From Anolis carolinensis (lineage: Eukaryota), in NCBI RefSeq assembly GCF_035594765.1, contig NC_085841.1:259934525-259998524 (forward strand): DNA of 64,000 nt, given 5' to 3'. Of this stretch, positions 10,079 through 62,255 are shown piece after piece (positions within the stretch are counted from its first letter, which is position 1; each line of letters opens with the position of its first letter). The translations under genes and the position numbers were made by a program. The notes under the pieces are model-generated. The model did not search any database. It worked only from the letters and a program-made list of their open reading frames with translations, and was not told the origin of the DNA.

Positions 10079-10111
<33 letters not shown>

Positions 10112-18007: not shown

Positions 18008-18735
18008 TTACTGAGGTCGAATTTTCATTTCTGCATATTTGTAAGAATAATGGTGTCCCTTTCCAGCAACCCAGTTGATGCCATCAGCATAAGAGGTATG
18101 TTCCCCCCTGAGGTACAGGCCATTCAGGTTGGATGTGTGGCAATGACTATACCACCAGCCTCCCTTATACATCACAGCACAGCTTCCTGATTCATAGCCA
18201 TCATTGTCCCTGTCTCGTGTGGAGAATGCAAAGCCACTGTGCCCTGAAAATGAATCACCTGAAAGAGAATGAAAAAAGGAAAAGCAGATATAAACTCTTC
18301 AGAATCAACTTAGTATGTGTTCTCTATGTGATGAAAATGCAAATTTGTTGCTAGAAAATATTAAACAAGTGATCAAACCAAAGGAAATTGTTTGCATTCA
18401 GAAGGTCCCTGTTTCTCTGTATAAGTTTGGGAAAAAAACCCTTTCTTGGACCAGAAAGATTAACTGCCACTTCATGTAGACTAGGGTATGGACAAATTTT
18501 GCAGGTAGGAATGGGAGCTTACATCCCTCATTTCAATGTAGTGGGGCCAGATATATGTTCAACATTGGATTCCTCCAAAGCTTTCTAAGGGTCCTATTCC
18601 TTTCGTTGTTTCTAGTTTTGTTATTCATTTAGGACAGTTAACTAAATATTTAAAACAATGCAAATTAAAAACAAATCACCCACTAACATAGCATATAAAC
18701 GTCATATTTACAAACAATTAAAATATAACTTAAAG

Positions 18736-18768
<33 letters not shown>

Positions 18769-21700
18769 CATCATTTATACACCATTTTTTCTTTCCACAT
18801 TAAACATTAAAGTGTTGTAGTAGAGCCTGTGAGTAACGTTACAATCAGTAGTATGGGCGCCAGAAGGGGAAAAAGGGTTACTCAGGAGCAGGAATCCAAT
18901 GATGAGCAGCAGAGAAAGAAGATCCGGGACATACTTACAGCATCTATAGATGAGGAGTCGTTTGAGGGATTCTCTGGGGATGATAATGTTGCAGACAGTA
19001 GTATGGGTGTCAGAAGGGGGGAGAGTTACTCGGGAGCAGGAATCTGATGATGAGCAGCAGAGAAAGAGAATTCGGGACATACTTACAGCACCTACAGATG
19101 AAGAGTCGTTTGAGGGATTCTCTGAGGATGATGGGTCAATGAGTGAAGGAGAAGAAGGAGACACCATGGATTGGACTAAGATAAGAGAAGTGCAAGCTAT
19201 TTGTGAGGCACCAACAACTAGTGATACCTGTATGGGGTTCTCTGGGAGTGAAGACTGGTAATCAGGGGATCCAACTTATTCTTGGGGGGGATCTAAGTCT
19301 TGACAGGAGATGGAGGAATTAGAGGGAGAGTCAAAGGAATTCACGTGAAGAGCTGGGAGCAGCTGTGGGGGATGGTGATGGGGCGGTGGTCAGTTCATCC
19401 TCTGATGATGGTTTGTAGATAAAAGTGGGTTCAGGGGTGAGGGGTCTTTGCAGAAGGCAAGGTGTTGATGTGTGTTCGTGTGCTGTGTATTGGGAAAGTT
19501 TCTTGTAGTCTTGCTGCTTCCTGTTTCATGTTCGGCGTTGGACTCGGATCTGCAGTTTGGACTGGTTTGGCTGGAGACGCTGCTTCTGCAGACATTGGAG
19601 CAACACTGCTTTGATTCCTCCTGCTTTGACCTTGGACTTTGGCTGACCATGCTTCTCTTCTTGCAACTCCCTCTTTTAACCATTTGTGTAAGGTGCCTTT
19701 TGTTTTGCCTTAGAGCACTTTGTTTGACTTGTTGATTTTTGCATCCAGTTGATTTCTGTTTACCTTTTGTACCAGGTGTGGTTTTTGAGTTTTTGACCAG
19801 TGGAACTGCATTTAAGTATCCCTGCGTCCTTTTCCTTTTGTTTCAATAAACTCTGTTTTGAAGACACTTTTAAGTCTGGCCCTTTAAGGCGTATGTGATT
19901 CCAACATAAAATATTACAATGCATTCAAAGACTACAGGCAATCCCCAAGTTCCAAACAAGGTAGGTTCTCCAGCACATATATATGATGAAAATGCAAATT
20001 CATTGCTAGAAAATATTAAGCAATTGATCATATGTACATACATACATGCATACAAAATAGGGAAGGTTTAAAACCTCTGTGGTGTTTGTTTTGCTGTCTA
20101 TGCCCCTGTTCAGAATATTTCACATCACTTTCTGTCCCTGTGAATGATAACTGGATTTTGAGAAAATTGTCTTGTTGCAGAAACAAGGATTGGCGAGAAA
20201 GCTTCAGTGGAGACACCCGATAACCCTTTCAGGAGTAAATGTTCTTTCTTAGGGGTAGATTTCTGTCACTTCCTGTTGTAAGTTGGGGACTGCCTATATA
20301 TGCAAACTCTTTAAAATCCCTTAGAAACATGCACTATGCATGGTGTTTTAATAAAGGTTCAGGCAAATTTATGTCAGATAGGACACATCTGTCAAGGGCA
20401 ATTTGCACACATCTTTTCATATCCTTACCGATAGTTACTTTACACATCCTCATGTTCAAAAGTGTAACTCACCCATGTTGCCACCTATATAAGAGCCCAC
20501 TAACAGTGTGTAATTTTCTTCCTCACTTGAGATTTTGAAATTAGTGTACGTTGCATAAGTTCTAGTGTCACTCATGTCCTTCACCTCAATCCTCAACTGC
20601 TGTGTTCCTGGTAAGAGACATCACAGAGGAAGTATTATTTTCAAGAGAACCCCATAGACTTGGAGACAGAATGCTCTGTCTGGGCTTCACATTTGGTTAA
20701 CGTGTAATTTCAATCCAAAAATATGGGGAATGAAAGATTAAGGTAGTGAGTTTCTTCAAAGAGTCTTTCTACTGATGTGTTTCCATGAAACAGAGGAATA
20801 AATCAAGAACCCTAGCGACATGGCATGGGTGAAGGAAGCTATGGGTGCAACTGCATTATACAATTAGAGCAGTTTTATTCCACTAACTGCTATACTTGCA
20901 TGCTATGGGCTCCTGGGATCTGTAGTTTCATGAGGTGTTTAGAATTTCCTATTAGAGGGCTCTTGAACTCCCTTGAACTATGTCTTTCCAAATACGTTTC
21001 CCATATTTCCCAGGGATTAAGGATTAAATCAAGACACCTGGAGATCTCTACTGCAGAAGAAAATGCTAACAGAACCAACTGTTCAACTGTTAAATTGTTT
21101 AATTTCTGTTGATCAAGCACTGTATATCAACCTTCAAATGGAATATTTTAGCATCTTCCCTCCTTTGCCACCTCCTGGTCTAATGGCTGACTTCCAAAAA
21201 TGCAGTTGAGACTTGCTGAGGGGGAAGGGAATATCCTAAAGGGAAGGGGCTAACTCTGGATCCCTCCCATAATGACTATTTACAATATGCAGGATAACCT
21301 CTCCTAACTAAGCAAGAAAACAGAGGAGGTTTCTGTGGGGGCTTGACAAAACTAGTTCTAAAAGCCTCCATATCCCAAATTCATAATCTCTTACTGATAG
21401 ATTTTGTGTAGAAATATAAGCTCTAACCACCCAGTTCAGTAAATCACATACTCACACTGTTCCACATTTCATTTTTCAACAATCATGAATATTGTTCTAT
21501 TTGTAACAAGCAGCAGCAACATGGGTTTACCTGTGATTGTGAGTAGATGGATTTTATCATTGCCCAGCCAGAATTCTGATGCTTGGTTTCCAAACCCATT
21601 TTTGTAGGATGACCAGTCACGGTAGAAATCCACTGATCCATCTTGCCGCCTCTGGAAAACCTAGGTGTGGACAGAGGGCAATGATATATAGTATGCAACC

Positions 21701-24700
21701 ACCATGGAACTGATTTGCCCCCACTTTGGGATAAAGGGTCCGTGTAATTAGGTTCTGTGACACAAATTGAGTATAATACTGATTTTGTGGAAAGATCTGC
21801 TTACTGACTGACATTGCACCCAGGAGGCAAGTGTGCAAGATGGGAAAAGGTTGAAATTGCACAAATGAAAGTTGTGTGAGCATAATGACCCCCATCGGCA
21901 ATGTTTTTAAAAGGATTGTAAAGGAGAGATTTGCACATATCTTCATTACTCCCTTCTTAGAATCATAGAATCATAGAATAGTAGAGTTGGAAGAGACCTC
22001 ATGGGCCATCCAGTCCAACCCCCTGCCAAGAAGCACCCACATGACCATTGATTCAGATTAATAATTTGGGTACTCGGTTAGTATCCACCATGTTTCCTTA
22101 GGGAAACTTCTGTGACTTTCCCTCCACATTATATGGTGGTTAGTGCAGATTGTAGGCTCATATCTTGCACCCTTTGTTAAAGCTTACCAGCCAGCCTCCT
22201 CCATCAGTCTCCATGTCACAGAAGACGGCCATTGCTTTCCCCGTGGCAGGGTAGATTGTATACCAACCACTCAGTGTCTCTCCACGTCTGAGAAGCTCTT
22301 TGCAGTCTTTGGCTCCTGCCGCTACATGACATATCAAAGAGGAATGTGTTAACCCGTAAATGCAGTCTCCATTCTGGTAATATAATATGCATGAGGAGGG
22401 AAATAGGCCCTTTATTGCAGGGGTGAACAATTTCTAGAAGCGGTGTAGCCTCACAGCCTTCCTGCCTGAACTCCTGGGGGCTGCACCATCTCTAGAAACA
22501 CACCTGCTTCTCTAATCCCCTCTGCACTCTCTACCAGCCATGGAGAGGCTGTTGAGGACAGGATGGTGGTGGTATTGAAGCAACCTAGTGAGTCCGGCAG
22601 ATGGCCACAAGGAAGCTGTAATAGAGTTCCACATGCAGAACACATAATGTTATGCACATACAATTTATCACTTTTAAACTTATTTATTATGCAGTGCTTT
22701 TCCCATGAAATAAATAAATAAATATAAAATCTCAACTGTGAATTTTTGCATGCAGAAACAGTTTAATGCAATATTTTTGAAACTGATATAGGGCGCTTCC
22801 AGATAGCAATTTATTGCAGGTGCTGCCCACACGGGTGCCCAAAAGAAGTGGGCTTTCCGCTGGAATGGGGGCAACCAAAAATCCTGCTCTAAAACCTTTA
22901 AAATAAAGATTGGGCCCACGAGGCCCAAAGAAGTGAATTGGGCAGTGGGGACAGACTACTGGGTCCATGCTCCATTAGATCTGGGTCTTTCAGGAAGAGC
23001 TGGGTCTAATGAAGTATCAAAATAATTCATTACTTTTTTTTTTTTACCTAAGGTGTCGTTTGGATGCCTCTGGTAAAAGTCTGACGGGGCCCGCATTTCG
23101 GGCTCTGCCTGGATGGGCCCATAGTGATCGATCTTTGCTTCTTTTTTTTAAAAAAAGCAATGGCAACTCCACTAGAAAGTGGCAGTGTGTAAGATAATGA
23201 GTATATCTGTATCAGTCCGCTGTGACCCAGTATTTGCAGCACTTCCACTTTAGTGTCCTCCAGACTGAAAGAGCAAGAGGCAAAGGTCTGGTTGATGCAA
23301 AGCTGACACTGAAAATCAGTGACTCCCAGGGACCACAGACAGCTTTCAAAAACTATCTGCACATTTGATTTTTAAAGCCTAATGGTTAACTTTAAGCCAT
23401 AGCTGTTCTTCTAACATTTCTTGCTTTGCCTATACAGTAGAGTCTCACTAATCCAAGCTAAACGGGCCGGCAGAAGCTTGGATAAGCGAATATCTTGGAT
23501 TATAAGGACTGATCAAGGAAAAGCCTATTAAACATCAAATTAGGTTATGATTTTACAAATTAAGCACCAAAACATCATGTTAGACAACAAATTTGACAGA
23601 AAAAGTAGTTCAATACGCACTAATGTTATGTTGTAATTACTGTATTTACGAATTTAGCACCAAAATATCACGATATATTGGAAACATTGACTACAAAAAT
23701 GGCTTGGATTATCCAGAGGCTTGGATAAGCGAGGCTTGGATTAGTGAGACTCTACTGTATTTGACATGATAATTTTATTCTAGAAGTAGCAGTATCACAT
23801 TCATCCATGAGATGGCAGACTTCTCTAACCTGCCCTTGGGAAGCTGAAATCAGCTCTAAGAAATACTTTTCAGCAGACAGCCTCTGGGTTGCTTTCCTGG
23901 GAATTATAATCTTCCCCCTTTTGCTCCTTAACATTTCAATAAATTGCATTTGTGAGAGAGAAAGAGAAGAAATGCCACTGCCTGACAAATGGGAGAAGCA
24001 TGAACAGAGAAAAAGACTAAATGAGCATTGGGATGAAGAAAGAGAGAGAGAAAAAAGAAAGGAAGGGGAATAGAAGAGGGGGGAAACAAAAATTGACATG
24101 GTAATTAAGGGACATCTGTTTCATATTACATTCATTGTTAGCTGGCTTGAGCACCTATACTGGTGAGATATAAAACAAAGTTAATAATAATTTCTACATG
24201 AGGTTTCAGATCTATTTTGTCTATGTATGCATATGCTTCATCATTTAATACATTTTGATTGATATTTCCTAATGAGACTAATCTTCATTGACCATGACTG
24301 ATTATTTGAGATGGAAACTTATACCCCTCAGCCTTGCTTAAGGAGAACTGACCCATACTATCAGCCCCTGCCCCCAGTTTTGAGTCCGTGCTGAAGATGG
24401 TATTGGTGACAAGACATACCTTGGTGATGACAGTTGGCAAGGCTGCATGCCTCTCTTGTAGAAAGAGAAAAGCAGTTTCTGAAGTCAGCAAAGATGGTCC
24501 CCACATCATAATTAAAATGAGAATAAGAGCAGTTTCAGGGGCACTGTCTAGTGGCACTACATTTGTTTTTTTTTAAAAAAAATACAAATGTATTTTACCT
24601 GGGGAAGTAGAATTATGCAAAGTTTCTTCCACTCTGGACCTATTTTTGCAGACAAATGTAATAAGCAGAAGCATAAAGGCGAGTGCAGCTTGTAATGTTT

Positions 24701-25277
24701 GTGTGGGTTAGGTGTCACCTGTAATCCTGTTTCTATTTCTTCAAATGAGGTTGTAGTGAACTTACCCTGGTCTCCTTTCTCTCCCTTGGGTCCAGCTTTC
24801 CCAAGTGCCCCATCGGGGCCTCTGTCACCTGAGGGAAAGAGATCAGTGACTTTTCGGAAAACATTTGAAACACCTCTAGAATCCATATTTTCAAGCCATC
24901 CAATATATTGGTAAAATGTAGAAATCAATAGAGACCAGCCTGATAGATTGGAGTTGGTTGGTTTTCAGAACCTGGGTTAAATTTCAGCTTGAATTTGTAA
25001 GGACTCCCTTGAAGGCACTATCCTAGGTCACATCCACTTTAGTAATTTTTGGTCATTGGTTTTTGGAGAACATTGTTTGATGGAGCTTCAATGCTGCTGT
25101 TTTATACTTTATGTTTTAATTGTGTGTTTATCTGGTGTGGTGTATTTTATGATGCTCTTATTTTAATGGTGTGTTTTGTTTTAATTGATCATTTTTTTAA
25201 TGTCTTATGGACATTTTGTCCCATATTAAGCCGCCCTGTGTCTCTTCGGAAAGATGGTGGTGGGTATAAGAATAAAG

Positions 25278-25353
<76 letters not shown>

Positions 25354-25992
25354 ATAATAGTAAGTAAATCATAATGACTCTGTCCCTGCCAGAATGGCTT
25401 GAACTCTTACTCTTTCACCCCCACTTCTATTGTCTCTGCCCATAAGATTGCCCATATATACCCAAGGTATAAATCCACAGCCAGAGTTTAGAAAAGTTGC
25501 TTTTTGGATGAAAAGCAAATGCAGGGATTTTTTTGTGTGGACTATGTCTTTTTAAAAAACACAGCTGGCTGTGCTTAATGCGGGATTGTATGGCTGCACA
25601 GAACTGTACAGAACTGATCCAAGGTAACATGAGGCAAGAATGTGGCTTTGTCCCTGTGTTAAGTAAACTCAGGGGATTTGGACTATACCCTGACTTTGGT
25701 ATGTCTGAACAGTTGGGCTGATTCCACAGTGGAACTGGCTGCAACCGTTCCCTCTTCCATCCTGTGTTTCCCGCATGGGCAGTCCAGGGCCCTGAGATAG
25801 CAGTCACAATTCCCTCCTGCCCTCTGTGTCATGGAAGTCTCTGTCCGTGACGCATGTCTTAATGTCTGTCATTACCAACAGTGGCATTAGGTTTTTTTCC
25901 CTTCGTGTCAGGAGTTACTTGAGAAACCGCAAGTCGCTTTTGGTGTGAAAGTATTGGCCGTCTGCAAGGAAGTTGCCGAGGGGTCACCCAGA

Positions 25993-26047
<55 letters not shown>

Positions 26048-40100: not shown

Positions 40101-40489
40101 TTTACCAGCTGTTAGGATTTCTGGTAATTGAAGGCCAAAAACATCTAGAGGCCCCAGGTTGAGAACCACTGCAAAAATGGGTTTGCACCAGCTCTGAAGT
40201 ACACATTTCTAGTTGGATGTAGAAGTTCAGCCAGCATCTCTTGTGAAATTGCTACAGCAGTGTGAACAATGCCCACATTCCCTATCTGCATATACTTGAA
40301 AGATACAGGAGTTCTCTCCTCCAATGACCTGGGTCCTGCCCAGGAGAAACAAATACCCTTTGTCCTTCCCTCCCAGTTTGACTCACGTGCACAGCAGCTG
40401 GCTTCAGTCTCTTCTCCAAAGCTTCCTCTCTCCATAGACATGACAGCAAAGCAGATCACAGCCAGATGAAAGCCCAGCCAGCCAGCCAT
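31106..40489 (-). CDS. Ficolin-like gene B, ~327 aa; exons 40489-40387, 39961-39824, 38129-38067, 37776-37741, 35645(or 35651)-35518, 33351-33222, 32685-32551, 31356-31106
   Basis: Eight GT-AG exons with the same sizes as the paralogues (103/138/63/36/128/130/135/251); open frame from signal peptide through collagen and neck to FBG domain, ending MKIRPQ*. Confidence 0.93.
33503..33894. mobile_element. hAT non-autonomous element (paralogous copy ~45433-45821; partial duplicate ~34100-34312)
   Basis: caaactaagacc...gaggactcctg ends flanked by (a/g)tctagga TSD-like sequence; absent in gene D. Confidence 0.7.
36117..37252 (+). mobile_element. 5'-truncated L2-clade LINE (end of RT domain + 3'UTR, (GAT)n tail) in ficolin B intron 4
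   Basis: ORF 36067-36579: [21 protein letters not shown]...[13 protein letters not shown]...[12 protein letters not shown]...[15 protein letters not shown], then in-frame stops. Confidence 0.9.
38798..39187 (+). mobile_element. 5'-truncated L1-type insertion with A-rich tail and 19-bp TSD, specific to gene B
   Basis: TSD aaacataattccaatcgta (38779-38797, 39188-39206); ORF end ...[21 protein letters not shown]; empty site in gene C (~50370). Confidence 0.8.
39233..39690 (-). mobile_element. Full-length tRNA-derived SINE with L2-like 3' tail, specific to gene B
   Basis: 5' ggggccaggctgtggcgcagg A-box, tail ccgccctgagtcccc...(aaat)n; absent from gene C. Confidence 0.75.
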
Positions 40490-49000: not shown

Positions 49001-51811
49001 CTTCATCACATGGGGGACCCTCCCCACTTGCTGTTTTGCCAGCCTCCGTCACACAGGGAGAGCATCACCAAAGCTGTGCAGAAATCCCCCGTGTCGCAAT
49101 GAAAGTGTCATTTATGCTTCCATTCCGGTTGTGAGCAGGGCATCCAACGGAAGTCTAGCTATGTTGTGTGATGGGCAGCAGATCCCCACACCCCCTGGGC
49201 AGGCACCGCCGAGATCACTGCAATCTGTGGTGATTCTGGCAGTGTTTGTGGCAAGATCCCTAATGAGTCTCTGATTGTGCAATATGCCTGTTTACTTGGG
49301 TAGGAGGGTTACACCATTGTTAAAAGAGGCCTCAACCATACTGTCTGTGGTAGTGGTGACAAGACGTACCTTGATGCTGACAGCTGGCAATTGTGCATGC
49401 CTCTCCTGTAGGAAGAGAAAAGCAATTTCTGAATTAAACAAAGATGGTGCCCTTGTTGGAATTAAAATGAGAATGAGAGCAGTTTTGGCAGCCTTGTAAA
49501 TTGGCACTGCATTAAAAAAAATACAAGTTTATTTTACTTGAACAATTAAAAAGTAATCAGTGGTTCTTCCACTCTATCCCTATTTTTGCAAACACATCTA
49601 AACAGCTAAAGCATAAAGTCTAGTGCAGCTTGTGATGTTTGCATGGGCCAGGCTTCACCTGCGATCCCTCTTCAAATGAGGCTGTAGGGGAAGGTACCTT
49701 GCTCTCCTTTCTCTCCCTTGGGTCCAGCTTTCCCAGGTGCCCCAGCAGAGCTTCTCTCACCTGAAGGAAAGAGGCAGAGGACATTTGAAACTTCTCAAGA
49801 CACCATATTTTAAGCCCTCCAATGTAATGGTAAAATGCACGTATTAGTAGAGATCAGCCTCATCACATTGGGGCCTTATCACATTGGGGTTGTAATTCAT
49901 TGGGCATCTGCGAGATATGCCATACAGCATGGCAAATCCATGGGGCAGTGGGGAGAAACCATTGCTACACAACTGCATCACCCGCTGCACCCCTTACCCC
50001 ATCCTATGAGGAATCATTGCTGCCCAAATTCCTCCCATTTTTATAGAACACAGAAAACCTCCCATATTCTGGGGGAAGTGTCATACCATGCTGTCAGGAT
50101 GTTTCTTCCACAGAGCCCCCTCAGAAGTTGCCTGAAGTTTGTATGATGGCATCCGGCGGGCTCTGAGGAGGAAGCGTCCTGGCAGTGTACTAGGAAGCTG
50201 ATTTTTCTACACGTGAAGAGGTGGTTTGTTTCAGCTTGAGCTTGTATGGATTCTAATGCCCCCTTTTATCAGCTGCTTGAAGAGCTCTGTAGTATATTAT
50301 AGAAAATGGGGAGTTGAACTTTCTCCATCTAGATCACTATATCCTGATCTGTTATATTGTGCATATGTCAAACATAATTCCAATTGTAATTTCCATTTTA
50401 ATAAATTATGCCAATAACCTCCCCCTTCCAGATGCACCTTTTGCCTAATCATAATCTTACCACTTCATCACATAACTTAAATTCCACTGAGTTCTACACT
50501 TAAAATCTGGTATTTTATGGATCCAATACATTTGTTTTGATTAAAGTGCAGTTTTTGAGTCTTTTAAACATCGAGGGCAGCATTTTTTTTCCAAACGTAT
50601 CAGGAAGAGGTGAAGGAATGGATTTTCCTCAAAACTCCAGATGTTTTGCCAAATTTCTAATGAAGTAGCACTTATTGTTCTTAGGTTAGGATCACCCAAT
50701 TTGTGGGAGGAGAAATTGGGGGAGGAGTGAAAATAAACTTTTTTGGGCAATTTCCTTTTGCTCCCCAAGCAGGAAGGTTTGGTTGTAAGCTACCTCATAA
50801 GACTTCTACTTTGTAGAAAAATAAAATAGCCTATTAGGGTACATTTTTCCTTCCTTCCATGATTTGTCTGTGTCCTGTGTTGGGAGGGCCAGTGCTGTTG
50901 CCCTTCCAAATGGGATTCCTTCCCATCCATTCTCTCTCTCCCTCTTCCTCTCTGTTGTTGGGAATTGTGGGAGTTGTAGTACCAAGAAGCACCAAGAGGC
51001 ATGTGGGCGGGGCCAAATGTCTGCAGTGTGGAAACCTCTTCATTGAAAAATACGCAGAATAACTGAATGCACTAAACAGGGTGATCCCAAGATAGGGAAA
51101 AACTACTTTTTATTACAGAATGGAGTTAGACTGAACTGTCTTCTTCTGAACACTTCTGAACACTTTCCAGTGTAATCTGATGAAGTCCTTTATCTGTTAG
51201 TGATGAAACACAGAAATCTGTTGCCTCTGGTTTGCAACAGATCTGCAGTCCAGAAGATTCTTGTCTCACCTGGGGGGCCCTGGGGGCCGGGGTCTCCCTT
51301 CATCCCGGGTAACCCATTTGTTCCTGGGATGCCGGGAATTCCTGGGGTGCCTGCCTGACCTTGGAAAAAGACCTTGTCCGTTCCACACTGCAATAAGCCC
51401 TTCAGCTCTGCAACGAGATGGGAAAGCACAAACAAAATGGTAGATCATAAACCTAAGTGAGTCATTACAGTGTAACAAACAATACTGGGTTTGCACCAGC
51501 TCTATACTATTCATTTCTTACATGTAATCTAAGAATACAGTTGTATGTAGAAGTTCAGCCAGCATCTCTTGTGAAATTGCTTCAGCAATGTGAGCAATGC
51601 CCAAATTCTCTTTCTGTACATTCTTGAAAGCTACAGGAGTCCTCTCCTCCAGTGACCTGGGTCCTGCCCAGGAGAAACAAATACCCTTTGTCCTTCCCTC
51701 CCACTCACGTGCACAGCAGCTGGCTTCGGTCTCTTCTCCAAAGCTTCCTCTCTCCATAGACATGACAGCAAAGCAGGTCACAGCCAGGTGAAAGCCCATC
51801 CGGCCAGCCAT
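43023..51811 (-). CDS. Ficolin-like gene C, ~327 aa; exons 51811-51709, 51407-51270, 49760-49698, 49405-49370, 47301(or 47307)-47174, 45281-45152, 44616-44482, 43273-43023
   Basis: Same 8-exon structure, open frame; near-identical to gene B from exon 3 onward. Confidence 0.93.
47777..48896 (+). mobile_element. Duplicated copy of the same L2 insertion in ficolin C intron 4
   Basis: ORF 47724-48161, same breakpoints as in B. Confidence 0.9.
50460..51188. mobile_element. Harbinger-like non-autonomous element in gene C intron 2 (related copy 54214-55032 in gene D intron 7)
   Basis: Ends ccacttcatcac / ctgatgaagtcc, 3-bp TSD-like flanks; absent at the homologous site in B. Confidence 0.65.
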
Positions 51812-51922: not shown

Positions 51923-53471
51923 GGTCATATTTCTTGGCTGGGGGTGGGGCTGGGGGGCTGGGCTGAAAACCTATTTTGAAATGGAAGCTGTCACAACAGT
52001 TGGCATACCTGACGTTGTGTTACTGAAATATGTGTTCCCTTTCTACAGCAAACATTGGAAGTCCCTGAATTGTGCAACTCCTTCATTCAGCAAGCATTTC
52101 CTCTTGTTGAACAGCATGCATCTTTGAGTTTTGATCCCTTTGCTTACTCATGAAGGTTTCCTTTGCTTTGCCTCAGTGCAATATTAGAGAAAAGTGCTTC
52201 CTCCTGGTGCCCACATATCGTCTTTCACTCTTACTCGCTTTCTATCTATCTCTTGGTTGCCTGAGTAATAATGATGAGTGAGTTGAACTATTCTATATTA
52301 TATAATCCTTTGTTATTGTTATTACTCCCTGTTGTCGTAGCTTCGCTGTTTTACGCTAATAACTTTTATTTGTGTCTAATTGCCAAATAGTCCTCACAGC
52401 TGAATTCAGGAAGAATATAGGCATTCTCTTTAACCTTAAGCAGACTACTTAAATTAGATGGAAAGTATTCTGTTTTTTAGTACTGTGATCCTATATTTTG
52501 AATAATGAACATGCCTTCTTGTTTTATTATCTCTCCCTCCCAAACTTCACCCCCCAGATTGTAATCCTGTAATTTTAGTAGTCCTGGTGCAAGAAAAATA
52601 TCTTGCTTGGTGGGCAGAAATGTATTTGCCCTTTAGTTCTGCAATTGATTAGACCTGACTGGTGTTAATAGGAGGCTGGGAATAAGTCAGTTCAAATAGC
52701 ATTTATTTATTATTAGTTTATTTCTTGTACTGTGTCTAGGCATCTCAAGGAGGTACAGTATATAATAAAACCAGTCAAATAAATTTCAAACAGTTTCAAT
52801 AAATAAAAATGATTTTAAAAGGCTAAACAATTTATGGAGTTAGAAAGACAAATTGGAAAAAGTTCAACATTTTAAAACATTTTAAAACCTTAAGTACGAA
52901 TGCACATGCATGCAAACTAGATGGCCAATTCAAATTAATCTTTCTGTGCTTTCAAAAATGTTTCCATAAGCTAAGCTTTGACACAGTCATGGCCTTGCTT
53001 CTCTTGCACTAGTTTCAGGAGTGATTTTTTAAAAATAGTAATTATGTTATTTTAAAAAGCCGCTACACCAGTATTTTGTGTCCAAGGCCATTACAGTATT
53101 GGTATGCGTGTTTGTGTGTGTCTCAAACAAATGAGAGTCTTTCATTCATTAGAAGCCACCATTCATGACATTATAGAAGGCTGTGCCTCAAACCAGACAA
53201 AAGAAAATCCAACTCAAGGTACAACTGGGCAAAAATCACCATCAAATTGCCTTTCTCCAATAAGTATATTGGGACTATGAGTGTCCCCTCTGTCTCATAT
53301 AGGGCTTCCATGTGCAAGAGGGTTCATCTACATGCACAATGTATGGGAATGTTAGAGCCCTTGCGCCTAGTATTTCAATGCCTAGCATTCAACATTTGTT
53401 ATATCAGGTGACACTTTAAAAAAATCATTTGCTTTTAAATTTAATGACAGAACAGTCTGAACAGATTTCAT

Positions 53472-56400
53472 TTACTGAGGTCGAATTTTCATGTCTGTGT
53501 ATTTGAAAGAATAGTGGTATCCGTTTTTAGTGGCCCACTCAATGCCGTCAGCATAAGAGGTGTGTTCCCCTCTGAGGTACAGGCCATTCAGGTTCGATGA
53601 GTGGCAAGCCGTGTACCACCAGCCTCCCTTATACATCACAGCACAGCTTGCTGTTTCATGGCTATCATTGTCCTTGTCTCGTGTGGAGAATGCAGAGCCA
53701 CCGTGTACTGAAAATGAATCACCTGAAAGAGAAAGACAAAAAAGGAAAATCATAATTTTATCAATATTTGTATGTATGTATTTTTATCCTTTACAATTTT
53801 ATCTTGTAAAAATCGCCTAGAGCATCTTGGATGGAGGGCGATTAATAAATAATTAAATGATGATGATGATGATGATGATAAATAAACCCTTTAATAGTTC
53901 AGAATCCACACAATATGTGCTATGGATGTGGTGAAAATGCAAATTCATTACTAGAACAATATTATACCCAAAGCAAATTGTTTGCACACAAAAGGTTGTG
54001 ATTTCAGTTCCTGGTCTCTCCCTGTCGGTTAGGGAAATACTCTCTTTCTTGAACCAGAAAGACCTGCTGCCACTCCATGTGGACTAGGGCATGGGCACCT
54101 TTTGCAGGGTGGGAATAGGAGCCCATTGGGTTTCCATGACAATCCAAACCCTGGTTCAATAGTTAAGCCACAAAATCCCTCATACACATTTCTGCATACA
54201 AAATGCAGTTATACCACTACATCACATAACTTACATTCCACTGAGTTCTACACTTAAAATCTGGTATTCCACTGGGTTCACCACATTCGTTTTGGTTAAA
54301 GTGCAGTTTTTGAGCTTTTTAATCGTTGAGGGCAGCATTTTTTTCCAACGTATCAGGAAGAGGCGAGGAAATGGATTTTTCTCAAAACTCCAGATGTTTT
54401 GCCAAATTTCTAATGAAGTAGCACTCGTTGCTCTCAGGTTATGATCACCCAATTTGTGGGAGGAGAAATTGGGGGAGGAGTCAAAATAAACTTTTTTGGG
54501 CAATTTCCTTTTGCTGCCCAAGCAGGAAGGTTTGGTTGTAAGCTACCTCATAACGCTTCCACTTTGCAGAAAAATAAAAAGCCTTTATTCCTTCCTTCCT
54601 TCCATGATTTGCCTGTGTCCTGTGTTGGGAGGACCAGTGCTGCTGCCCTTCCAAATGCAATACCCTCTCACCCTTTCTCTCTCTCTCTCTCTCCCTCCCT
54701 GCTCTTGGGAATGGTGGGAGTTGCAATCCAAAAGACCACCAGAGCCACTGCTGCTGCTGTTCCAAATGGGCTTCCCCACCATCCCTTTTCTCTCTCTCTC
54801 CCTCCCAGCTGTTGGGAATTGTGGGAGTTGAAGTACCAAACAACACTGTGAGGGATGGTGGCCAGGGCCAAATGTCTGCAGTGTGGAAACCTCTTCATTA
54901 AAAAATACGTAAGACAACTGAGTGCATTAACAGTGTGACTAAAAGGTAGGGAAAAACTCCATTTTATTATGAAATGGAGTTAGACTGAACTCTCTTCTTC
55001 TGAACACTTCCTAGCATAATCTGATGAAGTCCATAGAGTTAACCATGCATGGTGTTTTAATGAAAGTTCACAGGCAAATTTAGGTCGGATAGATAGCACA
55101 CATCCATCAAGGGCTATGATACCCGAGTAAGCTGCACTAAAATTACACATTTCTCTCCATATCCTTATTGGTAGCTAGCTATTATACAGATCTTCCATGC
55201 TCAAAAGTGGAACTCACCCATGTCGCCACCTGTATAAGAGCCCACTGAAAGGATGTAATTTTCTTCCTCATTTGAGATTTTGAAACTAGTGTACGTTGCA
55301 TAAGTTCTGGTGTCATTCATGTCCTTCACATCAATACGCAGCTGCTGTGTTCCTGGCAAGAAATGTCATAGAGTAAGCAAGCGAAACACCTGGACTGTGT
55401 TTATGATCACTTTGCATACAGTGAAATCTCTCTCCAGGCTTCACATTAAGTTAAACGTGCAATTTCAATCTTAAAATATGGGGAATGAAAAATTAAAAGT
55501 AGTGATTTTTAGCAGCCTAACAATACTGTTTGATTTGCAACAAGCAGCAGCAACATGGGATTACCTGAACTTGTGAGAAGATGGATTTTATCATTGCCCA
55601 ACCAAAATTCTGATGCTTGGTTTCCAAACCCATTTTTGTAGGACTGCCAGTCACGATAGAAATCTACTGATCCATCCTGTCGCCTCTGGAAAACCTAGAT
55701 GGAGACAGAGTGAACTTATATTTTAGTGTTTTTACTGAGAATCAATCTTTTTTTTATTCAGTGTTAGATGACTTTGAAGAGGCTTCTCTTAGAAGAAAGA
55801 AGCGTCATATGCGCTATCTAGGACAAAGTACCATGTGGTATAGTCATGTAAGTATTACGTAGATGATCCTAAAAAATTCAGTCTTTCAGCCTCATTCATC
55901 ACATAAATTGGTTGTGCTGATCCAAGGAATAATTTTGATTTTATTTATTTTTTACTTTTGGTCCATTGAAGGAACAGAAGACTAAAAACGAAATGAGACA
56001 CTGATGAGATTAAGGCAGAGGCTGGACACCAACCCGACCTCTTCTATTTGACACTAGGAGCACATTCTACGTGGGCCACAAGGAGCAAGGTTGGGGTACT
56101 CCAGCCTCGCTCCTTGAAGCCACAGTCTGCATGGCCAGCCACCAAGCAGCCTTTGGGGCTGGATGTCAGGACCCAGGCTGCAGAGCACCAATAACCTTAC
56201 ATGGAGGCCAGTCTCTATCTAATATCTTTATTAAAGAAATATATAAAATCAATAAAAACAAGTGAAGAATATAGTTCAGAAGCAGACCTTTCAGATAAGG
56301 TCAAATATAGTCCAGAAATGTATTGTCCAATATAAGATATTAGAGTTCAAAGTTTTAATCCACTTGACCGAAACACACACTTTGCCAAGCAATAGTGTGG

Positions 56401-59400
56401 GGAAATAACAGAGTCTTAAAAGTCCAATGAAGCTTGACAACAAGGCTGGAAATAAACTTGATTCTCGACTAGATCCGTGACTGGAGGCAAGACGAACATG
56501 AAGCATGAAACAGAGTCCGTGGTAAATCCGTGAGACAAGGCAAGGCTTGAAGCTTGATCCGGGAAGCAAGGAACTGGGATTACGAAGTCCACACACGATC
56601 TCTCTCCTCAAGCTGATCAATTGACTCCGCAAAGTATCCCTTGCGCCAAACACCTATATTGGGTCTCGTTTTCTCGCCAACAGAACTCTTTCCCTAGAGA
56701 ACGAGAAGCGAAACCCAACTCTGTCCAGATGCATGACTCCTTAGAATTTCCCAAGGGAAGCAGACCTAATCAGCCATTTGTTTGGCAGCGATTCTCAGGC
56801 TTCTGCGATTAGCCTCCCTGGCTCCCCTATCTTTAGCATAATTTTCCCTCCTGGAAAACGGGGGGGAGTTCTGCCCAAGGCCTGTTTGGCTGAATTCTTG
56901 AGGGCAAACGTCAACATCCTGCAGGTGAAGAGGCTCCGGCTCTGGCTGAACCGGCGAAAATCCCATGTTTTCCTCTTCGTCTGCCACAATAGTACTAGGA
57001 ACAGGACTACAAGGCCCATGAGTCATCACACTGGATGGCAGTCACATTGCGCTCTTCCAGGCTTGCCTGGTGGCTGGATGGTGTCTAGGTGGTTCAACAT
57101 ATTTGGAATGGTTTCACCATCACTGGATTGCTAATTTTACGTTGCCCCACCATTCTGGAACTTGCAGTACCCACTTAGCACGAGAATCATAGAATCATCA
57201 AGTTGGAGGAGACCACATAGGTCACCCAGTCCAACACTCTGCCATGCAGGAAAAGCACAATCAAAGAACCTCCAACAGATGGCCATCCAGCCTTTGTTTA
57301 AAAGCCTCCTAGGAAGGAGCTTTCATGACACTCCAAGGCAGAGAGTTCATAGCTCTTACAGTCAGGAAGTTCTTCCTAATGTTCTGTGGAATCTCCTTTC
57401 CTGTCATTTGAACTCACTGCTCCGGGTCCTAGTCTCCAGGGCAGCAGAAAACAAGCCTGCTCCCTTATGGCATCCTTTCAAATATTTTAACATGGCATCA
57501 TGTCCCTTCTCAACTTTCTCTACTGCAAGCTAAACATACCCAGCTCTTTAAGCCGTTCCTCATAGGGTATGGTCTCCAGACATTTAATCATTTTAGTCAC
57601 CTTCTTCTGGACAGGTTCAAACTTGTCAATATCCCTCTTGAATTGTGATGCCCAGAATTGGACACAGTATTATTCCAGGTGAAGTCTGACCAAAGCAGAA
57701 TATTGGGGCACCATTATGGTATTCATTGCCTGGCACTTGCAGTGATGATAACTGCGAAGGAGGAATTACTCCATCCTTTTGGCCCTTCCTTCTTGGATTA
57801 CTTTTCCCCCCTCTGGCTAACATCACTCCAGGCTCCAAGCAACAAACACTGCCAGGTAGGTCTAACAAAGTCCAAAACAACATGAAAAGGTAGTTGACAT
57901 CCCCTGCCCAGAGAAAGTGAGATGGTAGTGCAAAAAGCTGCAGCTTCTTCTCAAATGAGAAACGGCACGACTGTTTACACTTATTCAAAACATGGGTAAA
58001 GTGTCAGAGTAACCCAAGACTTTTATTAGCACAAGTTGAGGCTGCATGAACCAAAACCAGCTCCATGCAACATGAATCTGAGCCCTGTTTTTGAGATCCA
58101 GTGTAATACTAATCCTGTCCAAAGATGTGCTTACTGACTAATACTGGTACCCAGAAGGATGGAAGCATCCAGCAGCAGCCAGAATAATGGTGTCAGGATT
58201 TTCTGATATCCCCAGAGCAAGCCAAGTGCTTCTGGTGTCCTGGTCTGAGTCAGTGATTGCTTCTCTTGGCTCCTGGTGTATGTGTGGGGGGTAGATGGTA
58301 TGTTCCTGACCAACATCGAAAATAGGGCAAGTGTGCAAGGTGTGAGAAGATTAAATTACTAGGACAATTTGCAATTATGTGAGCATAATGATCCAATTGG
58401 CAATGATTTTAAAAGGGTCACAAAAAAGAGATTTGCACATATCCTTATGTGGGTTCTTTCCTCCCCCCCCCCCCCCCCCCCCAATATACACCATATTTTC
58501 CTTTGGGAAACATCAGTGACTTTTCCTCCACCTTACATGGTTGTCAGTGCAGATCATGGGCATGTCTATGACACATAGCAGTTTGTTAAAGCTTACCAGC
58601 CAACCTCCTCCATCAGTCTCCATGTCACAGAAGACGCTCATTGCTTTCCCCGTGGCAGGGTAGATTGTATACCAACCACTCAGTGTCTCTCCACGCTCCA
58701 GAAGCTCTTTGCAGTCTTTGGCTCCTGTCTCTAGATGAAATACCAAAGAGGAAAGTCTGTGCTGGTAAATGCAATCTCCATTCTGGTAATATAATATGCA
58801 TGAGGACAGCAATGGGTTTATCATAGGAGTGAACAATTTCTAGAAGTGGTGTAGCCATACAGATCTCTGCTTGAACTACCAGGGGCTGCACTCTCTCTAG
58901 GAATAAATTTGCTTCTCTGACACAAACACCCTGCCCCCAGCCTTAGAAAGGCTGTTGGGGGTGAGCGTGGGCTGGTGGGTAAATGCAGACTCCATTCTGG
59001 TTATATAATTTGCATGCTTATGCAACTAAACCTTTATTGCTGAAATTGATAATTTCTAGAAGTTGTTGCAGCAGCACAGTGAGTACTGTGGTTGTCTACA
59101 GGGAAGCTGTAATAGTTCTGCATGCAAGACTCTGCACAGGTGCGAAAAATCTTGGCCTACATGTGCATGCACAGAATTTTTAGTGCAATGGTTTGAAACT
59201 GATATCGTGGACTATGCTTATTTAAAAAAAAATTCAGTGGTGATTCCATTGAAAAGTGACAGTGGGCAAAAATGTGTATATCTGTATCAGTCAGTTGATG
59301 GCATGATGGGTTAAGCCCTTGTGCTGGCTGGACTGCTGACCTAAAGGTTGGGTGGCTGACCTGAAAGTTGCCGGTTCGAATCCGGAAGATGGGGTGAGCT

Positions 59401-62255
59401 CCCGTCTGTCATCTCTACTTGTGGGATGTGAGAGAAGCCTTCCAGCAGGATGTGTTACCCGGGCATCCCCTGGGCAACGTCTCTGTAGACTGCCAATTCT
59501 CTCCCACCAGAAATGACTTGCAAAATGTTCTCAAGTTGCTTTGGACACAATAAAAACAAGTCAGTTGTGACCTATGGTTTATATCATCTTCACTTCCAAA
59601 TTAGTCCTCCTGACTGAAAGAGTGAGAGGGAAGGCCTAGTTGATGCATTGCGGACTCTCTGTGACTCCTGGGGACCTCCAACAGCTTTCGTAGACCATCA
59701 AATGTTTATAGAGCCTAAGTTGTTAGCTGATGCTTTTGTTTAAGGTTTAACTTCCTAGAATTTTAAAGAGAAGAAAATATTCTCCTATACTGGGAGAGAG
59801 CAGGATATGAAATAAATAGTAATAGTAATACAGTAGAGTCTCACTTATCCAAAACTCGCTTATCCAACGTTCTGGATTATCCAACGCATTTTTGTAGTCA
59901 ATGTTTTCAATACATCGTGATATTTTGGTGCTAAATTTGTAAATACAGTAATTACTACATAGCATTACTGCGTATTGAACTACTTTTTCCTGTCAAATTT
60001 GTTAAACATGATGTTTTGGTGCTTAATTTGTAAAATCGTAACCTAATTTGATGTGTAATAGGCTTCTCCGTATTATCCAAAATATTCGCTTATCCAAAGT
60101 TCTCCCGGCCCGTTTATGTTGGATAAGTGAGACTCTACTGTATTAATAATGGTCCACATGAAGTTGGAGGTCTATTTTGTGTATAACAATAATATAATAA
60201 CTTTATTTTTGTATCCCGCCTCCATCTCCCCGAAGGGACTTGGGGCGGCTCACATGGAGACAAGCCCAACAACACAAGTTAAAACACAGAAAAATTAATT
60301 TAAAACATTATAACTACATAAAACAATAAAACACATCAACAGAATTAAGACCAGGACAATAATAATAACTAAATATTCAGATGGTAAAATTGTGTAGAAC
60401 TCTGAATGTGCTTGATCATTTAATACATTTTACATTGGTACTGCCTAATGAGTCTCATCTACTTTGATCTTGGTGGTGCAATATGCCTGATTATTTGTGA
60501 AAGAAGCTCATAACTCTCAGCCTTGTGTAAGGGGAGCTCAACCATACTATCCGTGCACCCACCCAGTTTTGGATCCGTGGTGAAGATGGTATTGGTGACA
60601 AAACATACCTTGGTGTTGACAGCTAGCAAGATTGCATGCCTCTCCTGTAGGAAGAGAAAAGCCATTTATGAACGAACAAATGTGGTTCCTGGGTCAGAAT
60701 TAAAATGAGAATAAGAGCAGTTTCAAGTGCTCTGTATAGCAGTACAGTACTTTATTTTATTTTACCTGGAGAAGAAGAGGTAAGCAAAAGTTTTTCCACT
60801 CTGGCCATGTTTTTCCTGACAAATTTAATAAACCAATGCATAATGTCGAATGTAGGTGATGGTTGCACTGAAAATTGTTCTAAGATTGACCAGTTCCTTG
60901 GGCTGGTCAGTGCATGGACAGAGGGTGCTTTTTTGTGTGATATCCCCTTATTTAGGCAACAGGAAACTATACAAACTGAGTCCATGAATACCCTTTGACC
61001 ATATACATTGCAAAGTTGTAAATTTCTCATTAGCCAGATAGGCCATGAGATACTAGCTGCTAGAGATATGGTGAACAATAAAACCATTTGTTTTTCCTAC
61101 ACCTAGGCTAGGCAGCTAACACACATGTGAACTTTTGATTTTTCTTTTCTTTTCTGTAAGCCTGACTAAGCCCTACTCTTGATCCAAGAAACCTCTGGTC
61201 ATTTTCCCAATTCTTGAAGCTTCTGAAGCTGTTCATTCCTGGCCTGATGGTGACAGCATGGTCCAGGCTTCATCTGTGATCTCTCTTCAATTTCTTCAAA
61301 TGAGGTTGTAGAGGACTCACCTTGATCTCCTTTCTCTCCTTTGGACCCAGCTTTCCCAAGTGCTCCAGCAGAGCCTCTCTCACCTGAGAAAAAGAGATCA
61401 GTACCTTTTCAGAGAACATTTGAAACATCTCTAGAAGACATTCCCCTTTTGTGTAACCAACCCACCCCATCCCTCCTCAGCACATTTTCTGTAATTGAGT
61501 ACATTAGAGAAAATGGGGAGTTGAATTTTATCCATTCAGACTGCGGTATCCTGCTCTGCTACTTTGTATGTGTGTCAAAAACAATGCAATTCCAATCGTA
61601 ATTTACATTTTAAAGTGCTAATATTCACCGTATGCCTTATGTTAATGTTAATCTGTTAGCGAAAAAAAAGACTGCTGCCTGTGGTTTGGTTTGCAACTGA
61701 TTTGTGGTCCAGATAGGCTTTGTCTCACCTGGGGGCCCTTGGAGGCCAGGGTCTCCTTTCATCCCGGGCAATCCGTTTGTTCCTGGGATGCCGGGAATTC
61801 CTGGGATACCTGCCTGGCCTTGGAGAAAGACCTTGTCCGTTCCACACTGAGATAAGCCCTTCAACTCTGCAACGAGGTACGAAGGACAAACAAAATTGTA
61901 CACCATAAACTTAAGTGGGGTGCAGCAAACAGTGATGAGTTTGCACCAGTTCTATACTATCCATTTTTCTAAGAATGAAAAAGATTGTCCTCAGTAGTTG
62001 TATGCATTAGAAAGAAATTTTGTGAAATTGCCCCAGCAGTTTGAACAATGACCATATTTTCTTTCTGCACATACCTAAAAGATATGAGAGCCCTCTCCAC
62101 CAGTGACCTGACTCCTATCCATAATTTCCACATCTCTCCCAGTTTGACTCACGTGCACAGCAGCTGGCTTCAGTCTCTTCTCCAAAGCTTCCTCTCCCCA
62201 TAGACGTGACAGCAAAGCAGGTCAGAGCCAGATGAAAGGCAGCCCAGGTAGCCAT
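53472..62255 (-). CDS. Ficolin-like gene D, ~327 aa; exons 62255-62153, 61866-61729, 61383-61321, 60644-60609, 58724(or 58730)-58597, 55694-55565, 55352-55218, 53722-53472
   Basis: [18 protein letters not shown] signal peptide, collagen, neck GEACNLASC, complete FBG domain; all splice sites canonical. Confidence 0.93.
56164..57030 (-). mobile_element. Solo LTR (867 bp, gypsy/ERV-type) in gene D intron 5
   Basis: TG...CA termini with perfect 5-bp TSD ctgga (56159-56163, 57031-57035); AATAAA on - strand at 56232-56227. Confidence 0.85.
57184..57700 (-). mobile_element. CR1 LINE 3' fragment
   Basis: gaatcatagaatcat tail with upstream degenerate CR1 ORF2 end. Confidence 0.8.
59300..59555 (+). 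mobile_element. tRNA-derived SINE
   Basis: B-box ggttcgaatcc (~59373), body homologous to the 11210-11415 copy. Confidence 0.75.
59831..60140. mobile_element. Tc1/mariner MITE, same family as 23435-23757, opposite orientation
   Basis: TIR cagtagagtctcacttatccaa, TA TSD. Confidence 0.88.

What the first reader, a model, noticed from the sequence alone, without database searches (positions are those of the whole stretch)
18008..62255. Four-gene ryncolin/veficolin-like ficolin array at the PSMD13-COX8B locus
Seen: four complete, co-oriented 8-exon ficolins with identical exon sizes, directly beyond COX8. Established: mammalian FCN1/FCN2 sit by COL5A1/OLFM1, whereas the human PSMD13-COX8BP neighbourhood continues to NLRP6/PGGHG/IFITM. 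From memory, WAAFHL (signal peptide), C..DK...[22 protein letters not shown] and GE.CNL..C resemble toxicoferan venom ficolins (ryncolin/veficolin). Inference: a lineage-specific, expanding innate-lectin cluster at a non-canonical locus, and a candidate non-venom source locus for venom ficolins.
Basis: partly seen in the sequence, partly recalled or inferred. Interest (0 to 1): 0.8.

Follow-up and report, generated by a model that had tools for sequence, protein, structure and literature searches.

The report
Anole four-gene ficolin (veficolin) array
Four tandem, intact innate-immune lectin genes (ficolins) lie between COX8 and an NLR gene in the green anole; they are the anole copies of the gene that snake and monitor-lizard venom studies call ryncolin/veficolin, and geckos, an anguid lizard and a snake hold that gene at the same place, whereas a turtle and a caecilian hold it elsewhere.

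Summary
Four co-oriented minus-strand genes (18008-28793, 31106-40489, 43023-51811, 53472-62255) have intact reading frames and AG/GT introns throughout. Each encodes a collagen stalk plus a fibrinogen-like head.

Three of my models equal RefSeq Anolis carolinensis 'veficolin-1' proteins residue for residue. In the fourth (G1) the exon-4 acceptor is mutated, and RefSeq skips that exon (317 aa).

PSMD13 (3' end) and COX8 lie on one side and a NACHT-LRR gene on the other, so the array is complete.

In a careful tree the four genes fall in an Anolis clade. That clade sits inside a pan-squamate clade holding Varanus veficolin-1, Vipera veficolin 2 and snake ryncolin-3/-4. Grouping them with canonical FCN1/2 is rejected (AU p about 1e-86).

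The NLR-ficolin-COX8 order recurs in Elgaria and in a gecko, and ficolin-COX8 recurs in a boid snake. Turtle and caecilian relatives sit beside IFI6-like and FAM76 genes instead, which are the human FCN3 neighbourhood.

It is a known family, already auto-annotated. I obtained no expression evidence.

The parts
1267..2116 (+). 3' end of PSMD13: the last two coding exons (about 1267-1356, and 2021-2113 plus the stop codon)
   Evidence: The translation of 1267-1356 matches human PSMD13 residues 314-343 in PDB (E 8.6e-14). The last exon reads ...[24 protein letters not shown].
4935..11904 (-). COX8 gene: exon 1 at 11791-11904, a roughly 6.8-kb intron, and exon 2 at 4938-5036 plus the stop codon at 4935-4937
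   Evidence: Exon 2 hits Pfam COX8 at 4.6e-16. Exon 1 begins with M, ends at a GT donor, and aligns with exon 1 of Elgaria and Candoia.
18008..28793 (-). Ficolin G1 (RefSeq 'ryncolin-1', formerly 'veficolin-1'). Exons: 28691-28793, 28244-28381, 24766-24828, [24420-24452 doubtful], 22188-22321, 21531-21660, 20473-20607, 18008-18258
   Evidence: Models. The exon-4 acceptor is mutated (CAAGAG). RefSeq P0337 (317 aa) equals the model without exon 4. Pfam finds Collagen and Fibrinogen_C. It is orthologous to A. sagrei copy b (100/99).
31106..40489 (-). Ficolin G2 (RefSeq veficolin-1, XP_062823583.1). Exons: 40387-40489, 39824-39961, 38067-38129, 37741-37776, 35518-35651, 33222-33351, 32551-32685, 31106-31356
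   Evidence: The model is identical to P0326. Pfam finds Collagen and Fibrinogen_C. It is 94.8% identical to G3 with dS 0.067.
43023..51811 (-). Ficolin G3 (RefSeq veficolin-1, XP_003214910.2). Exons: 51709-51811, 51270-51407, 49698-49760, 49370-49405, 47174-47307, 45152-45281, 44482-44616, 43023-43273
   Evidence: The model is identical to P0327. Pfam result.
53472..62255 (-). Ficolin G4 (RefSeq veficolin-1, XP_062823586.1). Exons: 62153-62255, 61729-61866, 61321-61383, 60609-60644, 58597-58730, 55565-55694, 55218-55352, 53472-53722
   Evidence: The model is identical to P0204. PDB: human FCN2 288.8 bits, FCN1 283.5, FCN3 252.6.
63633..64000 (-). 3' end of a NACHT-LRR (NLR) gene that continues beyond the window. 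It closes the array on the far side.
   Evidence: In L001 (the same record; the window's bases are identical), a 1071-aa product with NACHT, NLRC4_HD2 and LRR ends 1378 bp upstream of the G4 ATG.

Best explanation
The region is the complete ficolin array of Anolis carolinensis. It holds four tandem paralogues of the single squamate gene that venom-gland studies named veficolin (Varanus) and ryncolin (snakes).

That gene belongs to an old tetrapod ficolin lineage separate from FCN1/2. By its neighbours in a turtle and a caecilian, this is most likely the FCN3 lineage. By the base of crown squamates a copy of it lay between an NLR gene and COX8B, next to PSMD13. It was later amplified independently in anoles (4 copies here, at least 7 in A. 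sagrei) and in snakes.

How it probably works (inferred, not shown):
- Each gene makes a secreted chain with a hydrophobic leader, N-terminal cysteines, 17-18 Gly-X-Y triplets and a fibrinogen-like head.
- Chains trimerise through the collagen stalk and join into larger bouquets through the cysteines.
- The heads bind acetylated sugars on microbes at the calcium-dependent S1 pocket.
- The stalk lysine in the xGKAGP motif docks MASP proteases, which starts the lectin pathway of complement.
- The paralogues differ most in the ligand-binding P domain, which suggests a widened range of targets.
For: - Gene models and intact frames. They are identical to RefSeq proteins.
- Domains: Collagen and Fibrinogen_C in all four.
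- The head aligns with human FCN2 over 214 residues. The DxDND calcium site, the CAVM.xGxWWYxxCHxSNLNG stretch and the cysteines are kept.
- The xGKAGx lysine motif sits at residue 89 in all four genes and in nearly all ficolins compared.
- Purifying selection: dN/dS is 0.27-0.37 overall, 0.24 in the A+B domains and 0.49 in the P domain.
- Tree supports: Anolis clade 100/99; squamate clade with veficolin/ryncolin 100/99; sauropsid clade 98/95; tetrapod clade including the amphibian 'ficolin-3' proteins 98/93.
- The AU test rejects union with FCN1/2 (p 9.7e-87).
- Synteny within squamates: Anolis NLR-4 ficolins-COX8-PSMD13; Elgaria NLR-ficolin-COX8; Paroedura LRR exon-ficolin-COX8 exon 2; Candoia ficolin-COX8 exon 1.
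- Tandem copies occur in Pantherophis and Erythrolamprus.
- Outside squamates, the ficolin lies by an IFI6-like gene in the turtle and by FAM76 in the caecilian.
- In cattle the order is PSMD13, COX8B, NLRP6 with no ficolin between (PMC10804543).
- Human FCN3, IFI6 and FAM76A lie in one 1p35.3-36.11 interval (PMC8269103).
Against: - No expression evidence was obtained. The four runs laid on G1 covered only intronic repeats.
- Secretion, oligomerisation, sugar binding and MASP binding are inferred from conserved motifs and from knowledge of human ficolins. None was tested.
- G1 has lost its normal exon-4 acceptor. G2 and G3 carry a Gly-to-Ser break in the collagen repeat ([11 protein letters not shown]). 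Either change could impair assembly.
- No mammalian FCN3 sequence could be put in the tree, so orthology to FCN3 rests on neighbours alone. By score, human FCN3 is not closer to this clade than FCN1/2 are.
- The Cerberus ryncolin proteins themselves were not in the data set. Only genes that NCBI or UniProt name after them were.
- The Varanus gene could not be located.
- The tree does not resolve whether the COX8-side copy arose by a move or by an older duplication.
Confidence: 0.85

Rival explanations
1. There was no move. The amniote ancestor already had two FCN3-type genes, one by IFI6/FAM76A and one between NLR and COX8B. Turtles (and crocodilians and birds) lost the second. Squamates kept it, and some also kept the first.
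For: A second squamate clade exists (Zootoca, Elgaria copy b, three geckos; 97/93). In Elgaria it is on a different contig (35.9 Mb against 184 Mb). The two squamate clades, the tuatara and the turtle+alligator clade form an unresolved fork, and 'both squamate clades' is not a clade.
Against: No non-squamate was seen with a ficolin between COX8 and NLR, and cattle have none there. The neighbours of the second squamate clade could not be read because look-ups were exhausted. The short internal branches fit a duplication near the base of lepidosaurs equally well.
Confidence: 0.3
2. One or more copies are decaying rather than working. G1 may be failing because of the lost exon-4 acceptor, and G2/G3 because of the glycine break in the collagen helix.
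For: G1 reads CAAGAG instead of CAG|G. RefSeq lists several exon-skipping G1 isoforms of 271, 272 and 317 aa. GGC has changed to AGC at residue 84 in G2 and G3, which cuts the longest Gly-X-Y run from 18 to 11 triplets.
Against: All frames are open and all other splice sites are intact. dN/dS is 0.27-0.37 for every pair. Skipping exon 4 keeps the frame. G1 has a one-to-one orthologue in A. sagrei (100/99). A single interruption in the collagen stalk is tolerated in MBL (from my own knowledge).
Confidence: 0.15
3. The genes are oral-gland or venom-type secretory toxins recruited in Toxicofera, not general immune lectins.
For: Their names derive from venom-gland transcripts and venom proteomes. 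Sea-snake genome work counts ficolins among venom genes (PMC8557462).
Against: The clade includes geckos, skinks, lacertids and an amphisbaenian at the same locus. Comparative transcriptomes found this ficolin in many body tissues and concluded it is not a Toxicoferan venom component (10.1101/006031). The immune-lectin motifs are all kept.
Confidence: 0.04
4. They are relocated orthologues of canonical FCN1/FCN2.
For: Human FCN2 and FCN1 are the best-scoring solved structures (288.8 and 283.5 bits, against 252.6 for FCN3).
Against: The tree separates them from the turtle, crocodilian and bird FCN1/2 genes. The AU test rejects the union (p 9.7e-87). A canonical turtle FCN2 scores 352 bits against human FCN2, far more than G4 does.
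Confidence: 0.01

Closest known systems
Veficolin-1 (Varanus komodoensis) and ryncolins / 'veficolin 2' of snakes
   Same: They share the clade (100/99). The architecture and length are the same (326-336 aa), as are the GIPG.PGTNG collagen motif, the xGKAGP lysine motif, the GE/DxC...C linker and the W.GFHL-type leader. They also share the chromosomal place beside COX8, shown for Elgaria (sister of Varanus veficolin-1) and for Candoia.
   Different: The anole has four lineage-specific copies. It has no venom apparatus and no venom-gland record. G1 lacks a normal exon 4, and G2/G3 have a glycine break. The Cerberus ryncolin proteins themselves were not compared.
Human FCN3 (H-ficolin)
   Same: Turtle and caecilian members of the clade lie next to IFI6-like and FAM76 genes. 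IFI6 and FAM76A are neighbours of FCN3 on human 1p35.3-36.11. NCBI names the alligator, caecilian and newt members ficolin-3. The gene layout (8 exons) and the domain order are the same.
   Different: The squamate genes are not at that locus. By sequence score FCN3 is no closer than FCN1/2. No tree with a mammalian FCN3 could be built here.
Human FCN1/FCN2 (M- and L-ficolin)
   Same: These are the best-scoring solved structures. The calcium site, the cysteines and the S1-pocket stretch are conserved, and the collagen stalk carries the MASP-type lysine motif. This is the likely model for how the anole proteins work.
   Different: They belong to a different ficolin lineage (AU test). They lie at a different locus (9q34 beside OLFM1/COL5A1, from my own knowledge; not tested here). 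The two-cysteine linker exon is absent from the canonical FCN1/2 sequences compared.

Membership tests
Ficolin (collagen + fibrinogen-like lectin) | C-terminal fibrinogen-like (FReD) domain | tested here: met
   Pfam Fibrinogen_C at 5e-79 to 6e-76 in all four genes. A 214-residue alignment to human FCN2.
Ficolin (collagen + fibrinogen-like lectin) | Collagen-like Gly-X-Y stalk N-terminal to the head | tested here: met
   Pfam Collagen at 2e-10 to 2e-9. There are 17-18 uninterrupted triplets in G1 and G4, and 11 plus a further run after a Gly-to-Ser break in G2 and G3.
Ficolin (collagen + fibrinogen-like lectin) | Signal peptide and N-terminal cysteines for oligomer assembly | tested here: inconclusive
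   A hydrophobic leader ([13 protein letters not shown]) and the cysteines SCCA...QC can be read in the sequence. No signal-peptide predictor or assembly test was run.
Ficolin (collagen + fibrinogen-like lectin) | Calcium site and S1 acetyl-binding pocket residues | tested here: met
   DKDND (DRDND in G1) and [18 protein letters not shown] align with FCN2. The pocket residue roles are taken from my own knowledge of FCN1/FCN2/TL5A structures. Binding was not tested.
Ficolin (collagen + fibrinogen-like lectin) | MASP-binding lysine in the motif Hyp-Gly-Lys-X-Gly-Pro | tested here: met
   PGKAGP in G2 and G3, LGKAGP in G1 and LGKAGS in G4, all at residue 89. The role of the motif is from my own knowledge. 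Binding was not tested.
Squamate veficolin/ryncolin clade | Groups in a tree with the proteins named veficolin/ryncolin | tested here: met
   A 30-row squamate clade with support 100/99. Cerberus ryncolin-1 to -4 themselves are absent from the data.
Squamate veficolin/ryncolin clade | Same chromosomal position as the snake and anguimorph genes | tested here: met
   Elgaria, Candoia and Paroedura hold the gene next to COX8, with an NLR on the other side in Elgaria and Paroedura. The Varanus gene was not on record.
FCN3 orthologue group | Conserved neighbours of FCN3 (IFI6, FAM76A) | tested here: inconclusive
   This is met for the turtle and caecilian members of the clade. It is not met for the squamate genes, which lie by COX8/NLR.
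FCN3 orthologue group | Groups with mammalian FCN3 in a tree | not tested
PDB scores do not favour FCN3.
Canonical FCN1/FCN2 | Groups with sauropsid FCN1/2 | tested here: not met
   AU p 9.7e-87, lnL difference 235.

The most novel reading that the evidence does not exclude
A copy of the FCN3-type ficolin was inserted into the otherwise conserved PSMD13-COX8B-NLRP6 block in the squamate stem lineage. It became the main (in anoles and snakes perhaps the only) ficolin of this type. It then served as the seed for independent tandem amplifications in anoles and in snakes, and the snake copies gave the 'venom' ryncolins. On this reading, the origin of a supposed toxin family is a datable relocation of an innate-immune gene next to an inflammasome sensor gene.
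Probability: 0.5. Interest if true: 0.45.

Novelty: new member of a known kind. Interest (0 to 1): 0.3.

Why it matters
This gives the ryncolin/veficolin 'venom ficolins' a genomic address and a history. They are ordinary positional orthologues of a pan-squamate immune lectin gene. That supports the view that their presence in venom glands is not a toxin recruitment.

It also documents that copy number varies between anole species and that snakes too hold tandem copies. That makes this array a small natural system for studying how pattern-recognition lectins diversify: the ligand-binding P domain evolves about twice as fast as the rest of the head.

It is not a new kind of system, and the genes are already auto-annotated in RefSeq.

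Tried and rejected
- Word search with exon 8 alone returned only 67-143-aa fragments and no named full-length relative.
- The big representative search with exon 8 gave no close squamate representative. Its use was to supply a full-length axolotl ficolin as a scaffold.
- Ten further representatives turned out to be arthropod or mollusc techylectins and FIBCD1, not FCN3.
- Look-ups of Varanus veficolin-1, Chrysemys ryncolin-1-like, Alligator ficolin-3 and Elgaria copy b found no gene on record. Their loci are therefore unknown.
- RNA evidence failed. No listed run is on record as RNA. The four low-share runs laid on G1 exons 3-7 covered only two intronic repeats plus one unspliced 84-nt contig at the exon-3 edge. 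That gave neither expression evidence nor a decision on G1 exon 4.
- Pfam found nothing in four incidental ORFs.
- Mammalian FCN3 would rank below the 120 rows shown for any query I hold.
- The spliced models were never sent to a search tool as letters. Searches went exon by exon by reference, and later by the ids of identical RefSeq proteins. The joined models were used only inside scripts.
Full report
**Observation**

Six-frame scans and four-way alignments of the repeated units let me place every splice site. Pattern-anchored models give four genes on the minus strand:
- G1: 18008-28793
- G2: 31106-40489
- G3: 43023-51811
- G4: 53472-62255

Exons measure 103/138/63/36/134/130/135/251 nt. 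Every intron has AG..GT and there are no internal stops. The outer coordinates equal the finding's.

G1 deviates at exon 4. Its acceptor reads CAAGAG where the others read CAG|G. So either a 33-nt exon is used or the exon is skipped, and skipping keeps the frame.

Intergenic gaps are 1.7-2.5 kb. tblastn finds no further ficolin piece in the window.

**Independent check of the models**

The spliced models have no reference, so I searched exon by exon. Pfam was run on single exons. A word search with exon 8 found fragments only. The representative search with exon 8 yielded a full-length axolotl ficolin, P0102.

I aligned P0102 with the in-frame exon references of all four genes (A1) and used that alignment for the word search. 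It returned named relatives, among them Anolis carolinensis 'veficolin-1' and 'ryncolin-1'.

Cluster look-up and exact comparison give:
- G2 = XP_062823583.1
- G3 = XP_003214910.2
- G4 = XP_062823586.1
- RefSeq's main G1 product (XP_008107215.1, 317 aa) = my G1 with exon 4 removed

The window is base-identical to GCA_035594765.1 CM069367.1. The joined models were used only in scripts and were not sent to any search tool.

**Surroundings**

- PSMD13's last two exons lie on the plus strand at 1267-1356 and 2021-2113.
- COX8 is on the minus strand, with exon 1 at 11791-11904 and exon 2 at 4938-5036.
- Beyond G4, a 1071-aa NACHT-LRR gene ends at window position 63633.

The array is therefore complete at four genes, inserted between COX8 and an NLR. 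In cattle the listed order is PSMD13, COX8B, NLRP6 with nothing between (PMC10804543).

**The proteins**

All four carry Pfam Collagen and Fibrinogen_C. The head aligns with human FCN2 over 214 residues. The DxDND calcium site, the cysteines and the S1-pocket stretch are kept.

The stalk holds the xGKAGx lysine motif at residue 89, as do almost all ficolins compared. From my own knowledge of human and rat ficolins, this lysine is the MASP-docking residue.

Pairwise identity is 83-86%, and 94.8% for G2/G3. dS is 0.22-0.29 (0.067 for G2/G3) and dN/dS is 0.27-0.37. dN/dS is 0.24 in the A+B part of the head and 0.49 in the ligand-binding P domain.

G2 and G3 share a Gly-to-Ser break in the collagen repeat.

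**Phylogeny**

I built a quick tree of 77 rows and a careful tree of 70 rows. Seven rows were left out of the careful tree: Xenopus ficolin-1-B, two techylectins, two over-long turtle models and two partial Salvator proteins.

The two trees agree. Supports below are ultrafast bootstrap / SH-aLRT from the careful tree.
- The window genes and four A. sagrei proteins form an Anolis clade (100/99). G1 pairs with sagrei copy b (100/99). G2+G3 are sister to sagrei c+d (97/94).
- With Pogona they form an iguanian clade (97/97).
- That clade lies inside a 30-row squamate clade (100/99). It holds Varanus veficolin-1, Vipera veficolin 2, snake ryncolin-3/-4, and also geckos, skinks, a lacertid, a cordylid and an amphisbaenian.
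- This clade joins a second small squamate clade, the tuatara, and turtle 'ryncolin-1-like' plus alligator 'ficolin-3' (98/95).
- It then joins the caecilian and newt 'ficolin-3' proteins (98/93).

Canonical FCN1/2 of turtles, crocodilians and birds lies elsewhere. Holding it together with the window genes is rejected (lnL difference 235, AU p 9.7e-87).

**Synteny**

- Elgaria (sister of Varanus veficolin-1 in the tree): NLR, then one ficolin, then COX8 exons 1 and 2 (Pfam 2.8e-16).
- Paroedura (gecko): an NLR-type LRR exon, the ficolin, then COX8 exon 2 (Pfam 2.9e-11).
- Candoia (boid snake): the ficolin, then COX8 exon 1. That exon starts with M, has the same length as in Anolis and Elgaria, and ends at a GT donor.
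- Pantherophis has three ficolins in tandem and Erythrolamprus two. Their array ends were not reached.
- In the hawksbill turtle the clade's gene lies between a cathepsin-like gene and an Ifi-6-16 family gene. No COX8 or NLR match was found there.
- In the caecilian Microcaecilia, 'ficolin-3' is followed by a FAM76 gene.

Human FCN3, IFI6 and FAM76A share one 1p35.3-36.11 interval (PMC8269103). From my own knowledge, IFI6 and FAM76A are adjacent there, about 0.3 Mb from FCN3.

The simplest reading is an FCN3-type lineage whose squamate copy came to lie between NLR and COX8B by the base of crown squamates. An older two-locus state followed by differential loss is not excluded. The fork among the two squamate clades, the tuatara and the turtles is unresolved. 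Elgaria's second copy is on another contig, and I could not read its neighbours.

**Function and the venom question**

Nothing here tests function. The mechanism I commit to is a secreted, oligomeric, calcium-dependent lectin for acetylated ligands that recruits MASPs. It rests on conserved motifs and on the human proteins.

Comparative transcriptomes found this ficolin in many tissues of snakes and a gecko and concluded that it is not a Toxicoferan venom component (10.1101/006031). A sea-snake genome paper counts 2 and 6 ficolin paralogues in two species (PMC8557462).

My attempt at RNA evidence failed. The runs found were DNA-like or held only intronic repeats.

**Comparison and novelty**

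The genes are members of a known family. RefSeq already names them after veficolin and ryncolin.

I found no paper linking ficolins with PSMD13, COX8B or NLRP6 in reptiles. So the shared squamate address, its contrast with turtle and caecilian, and the independent amplifications (A. sagrei has at least seven distinct proteins) appear undescribed. They are of modest reach.

**Verdict**

This is a new member of a known kind, and interest is about 0.3.

Noticed in passing
window 24420-24460 (-), G1 exon 4 acceptor: G1 reads CAAGAG where G2-G4 read CAG|G. All RefSeq G1 proteins seen (271, 272 and 317 aa) skip this exon. G1 therefore lacks the two-cysteine linker (GEAC....C) that the other copies and most lepidosaur relatives keep.
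   Followed up: partly
window 38118-38120 and 49749-49751 (-), exon 3 of G2 and G3: A shared GGC-to-AGC change (Gly84Ser) interrupts the Gly-X-Y repeat two triplets before the GKAGP lysine motif. It is absent from G1, G4 and all A. sagrei copies. It may introduce a kink or weaken the stalk.
   Followed up: partly
window 18829-19261 (+), inside intron 7 of G1: Two overlapping ORFs carry ...[20 protein letters not shown]... and ...[20 protein letters not shown].... This is the same acidic FxGF-type peptide that earlier notes on this genome describe in Gypsy integrase tails encoded in the LTR. It is probably an LTR fragment.
   Followed up: no
window 27379-27958, intron 2 of G1: A GC-rich stretch is open in several frames on both strands and gives Pro/Gly/Arg-rich ORFs. 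It includes a 65-bp unit repeated 2.1 times at 27602-27737. It looks like a repeat, not a gene.
   Followed up: partly
window 36067-36579 and 47724-48161 (+), intron 4 of G2 and of G3: Paralogous ORFs of 170 and 145 aa (..[18 protein letters not shown]..) resemble the tail of a retrotransposon polymerase. Their shared presence shows that the G2/G3 duplication copied introns as well. Pfam gave no hit.
   Followed up: partly
G1 versus G3, codons 47-102 (collagen exons): dS is only 0.05 between G1 and G3 in the collagen part, against 0.35 in the head A+B domains and 0.48 for G1-G4 in the same part. The leaders of G1 and G3 are also more alike than those of G2 and G3. This may reflect gene conversion at the 5' ends.
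   Followed up: no
L002 (Pantherophis) and L005 (Erythrolamprus): Snakes hold tandem arrays of the ryncolin-type copy (three and two genes in view). In Candoia it is the veficolin-type copy that sits next to COX8. Snakes therefore have two old paralogue types within one array.
   Followed up: partly
proteins P0147 and P0163 (pig 'Ficolin 1', UniRef): These models lack any collagen repeat, carry DMDTD at the calcium site and sit on a long branch at the base of the ficolin clade in the tree. Two over-long turtle models carry the same DMDTD site. They may be mis-named or mis-predicted and should not be used as FCN1 references.
   Followed up: no
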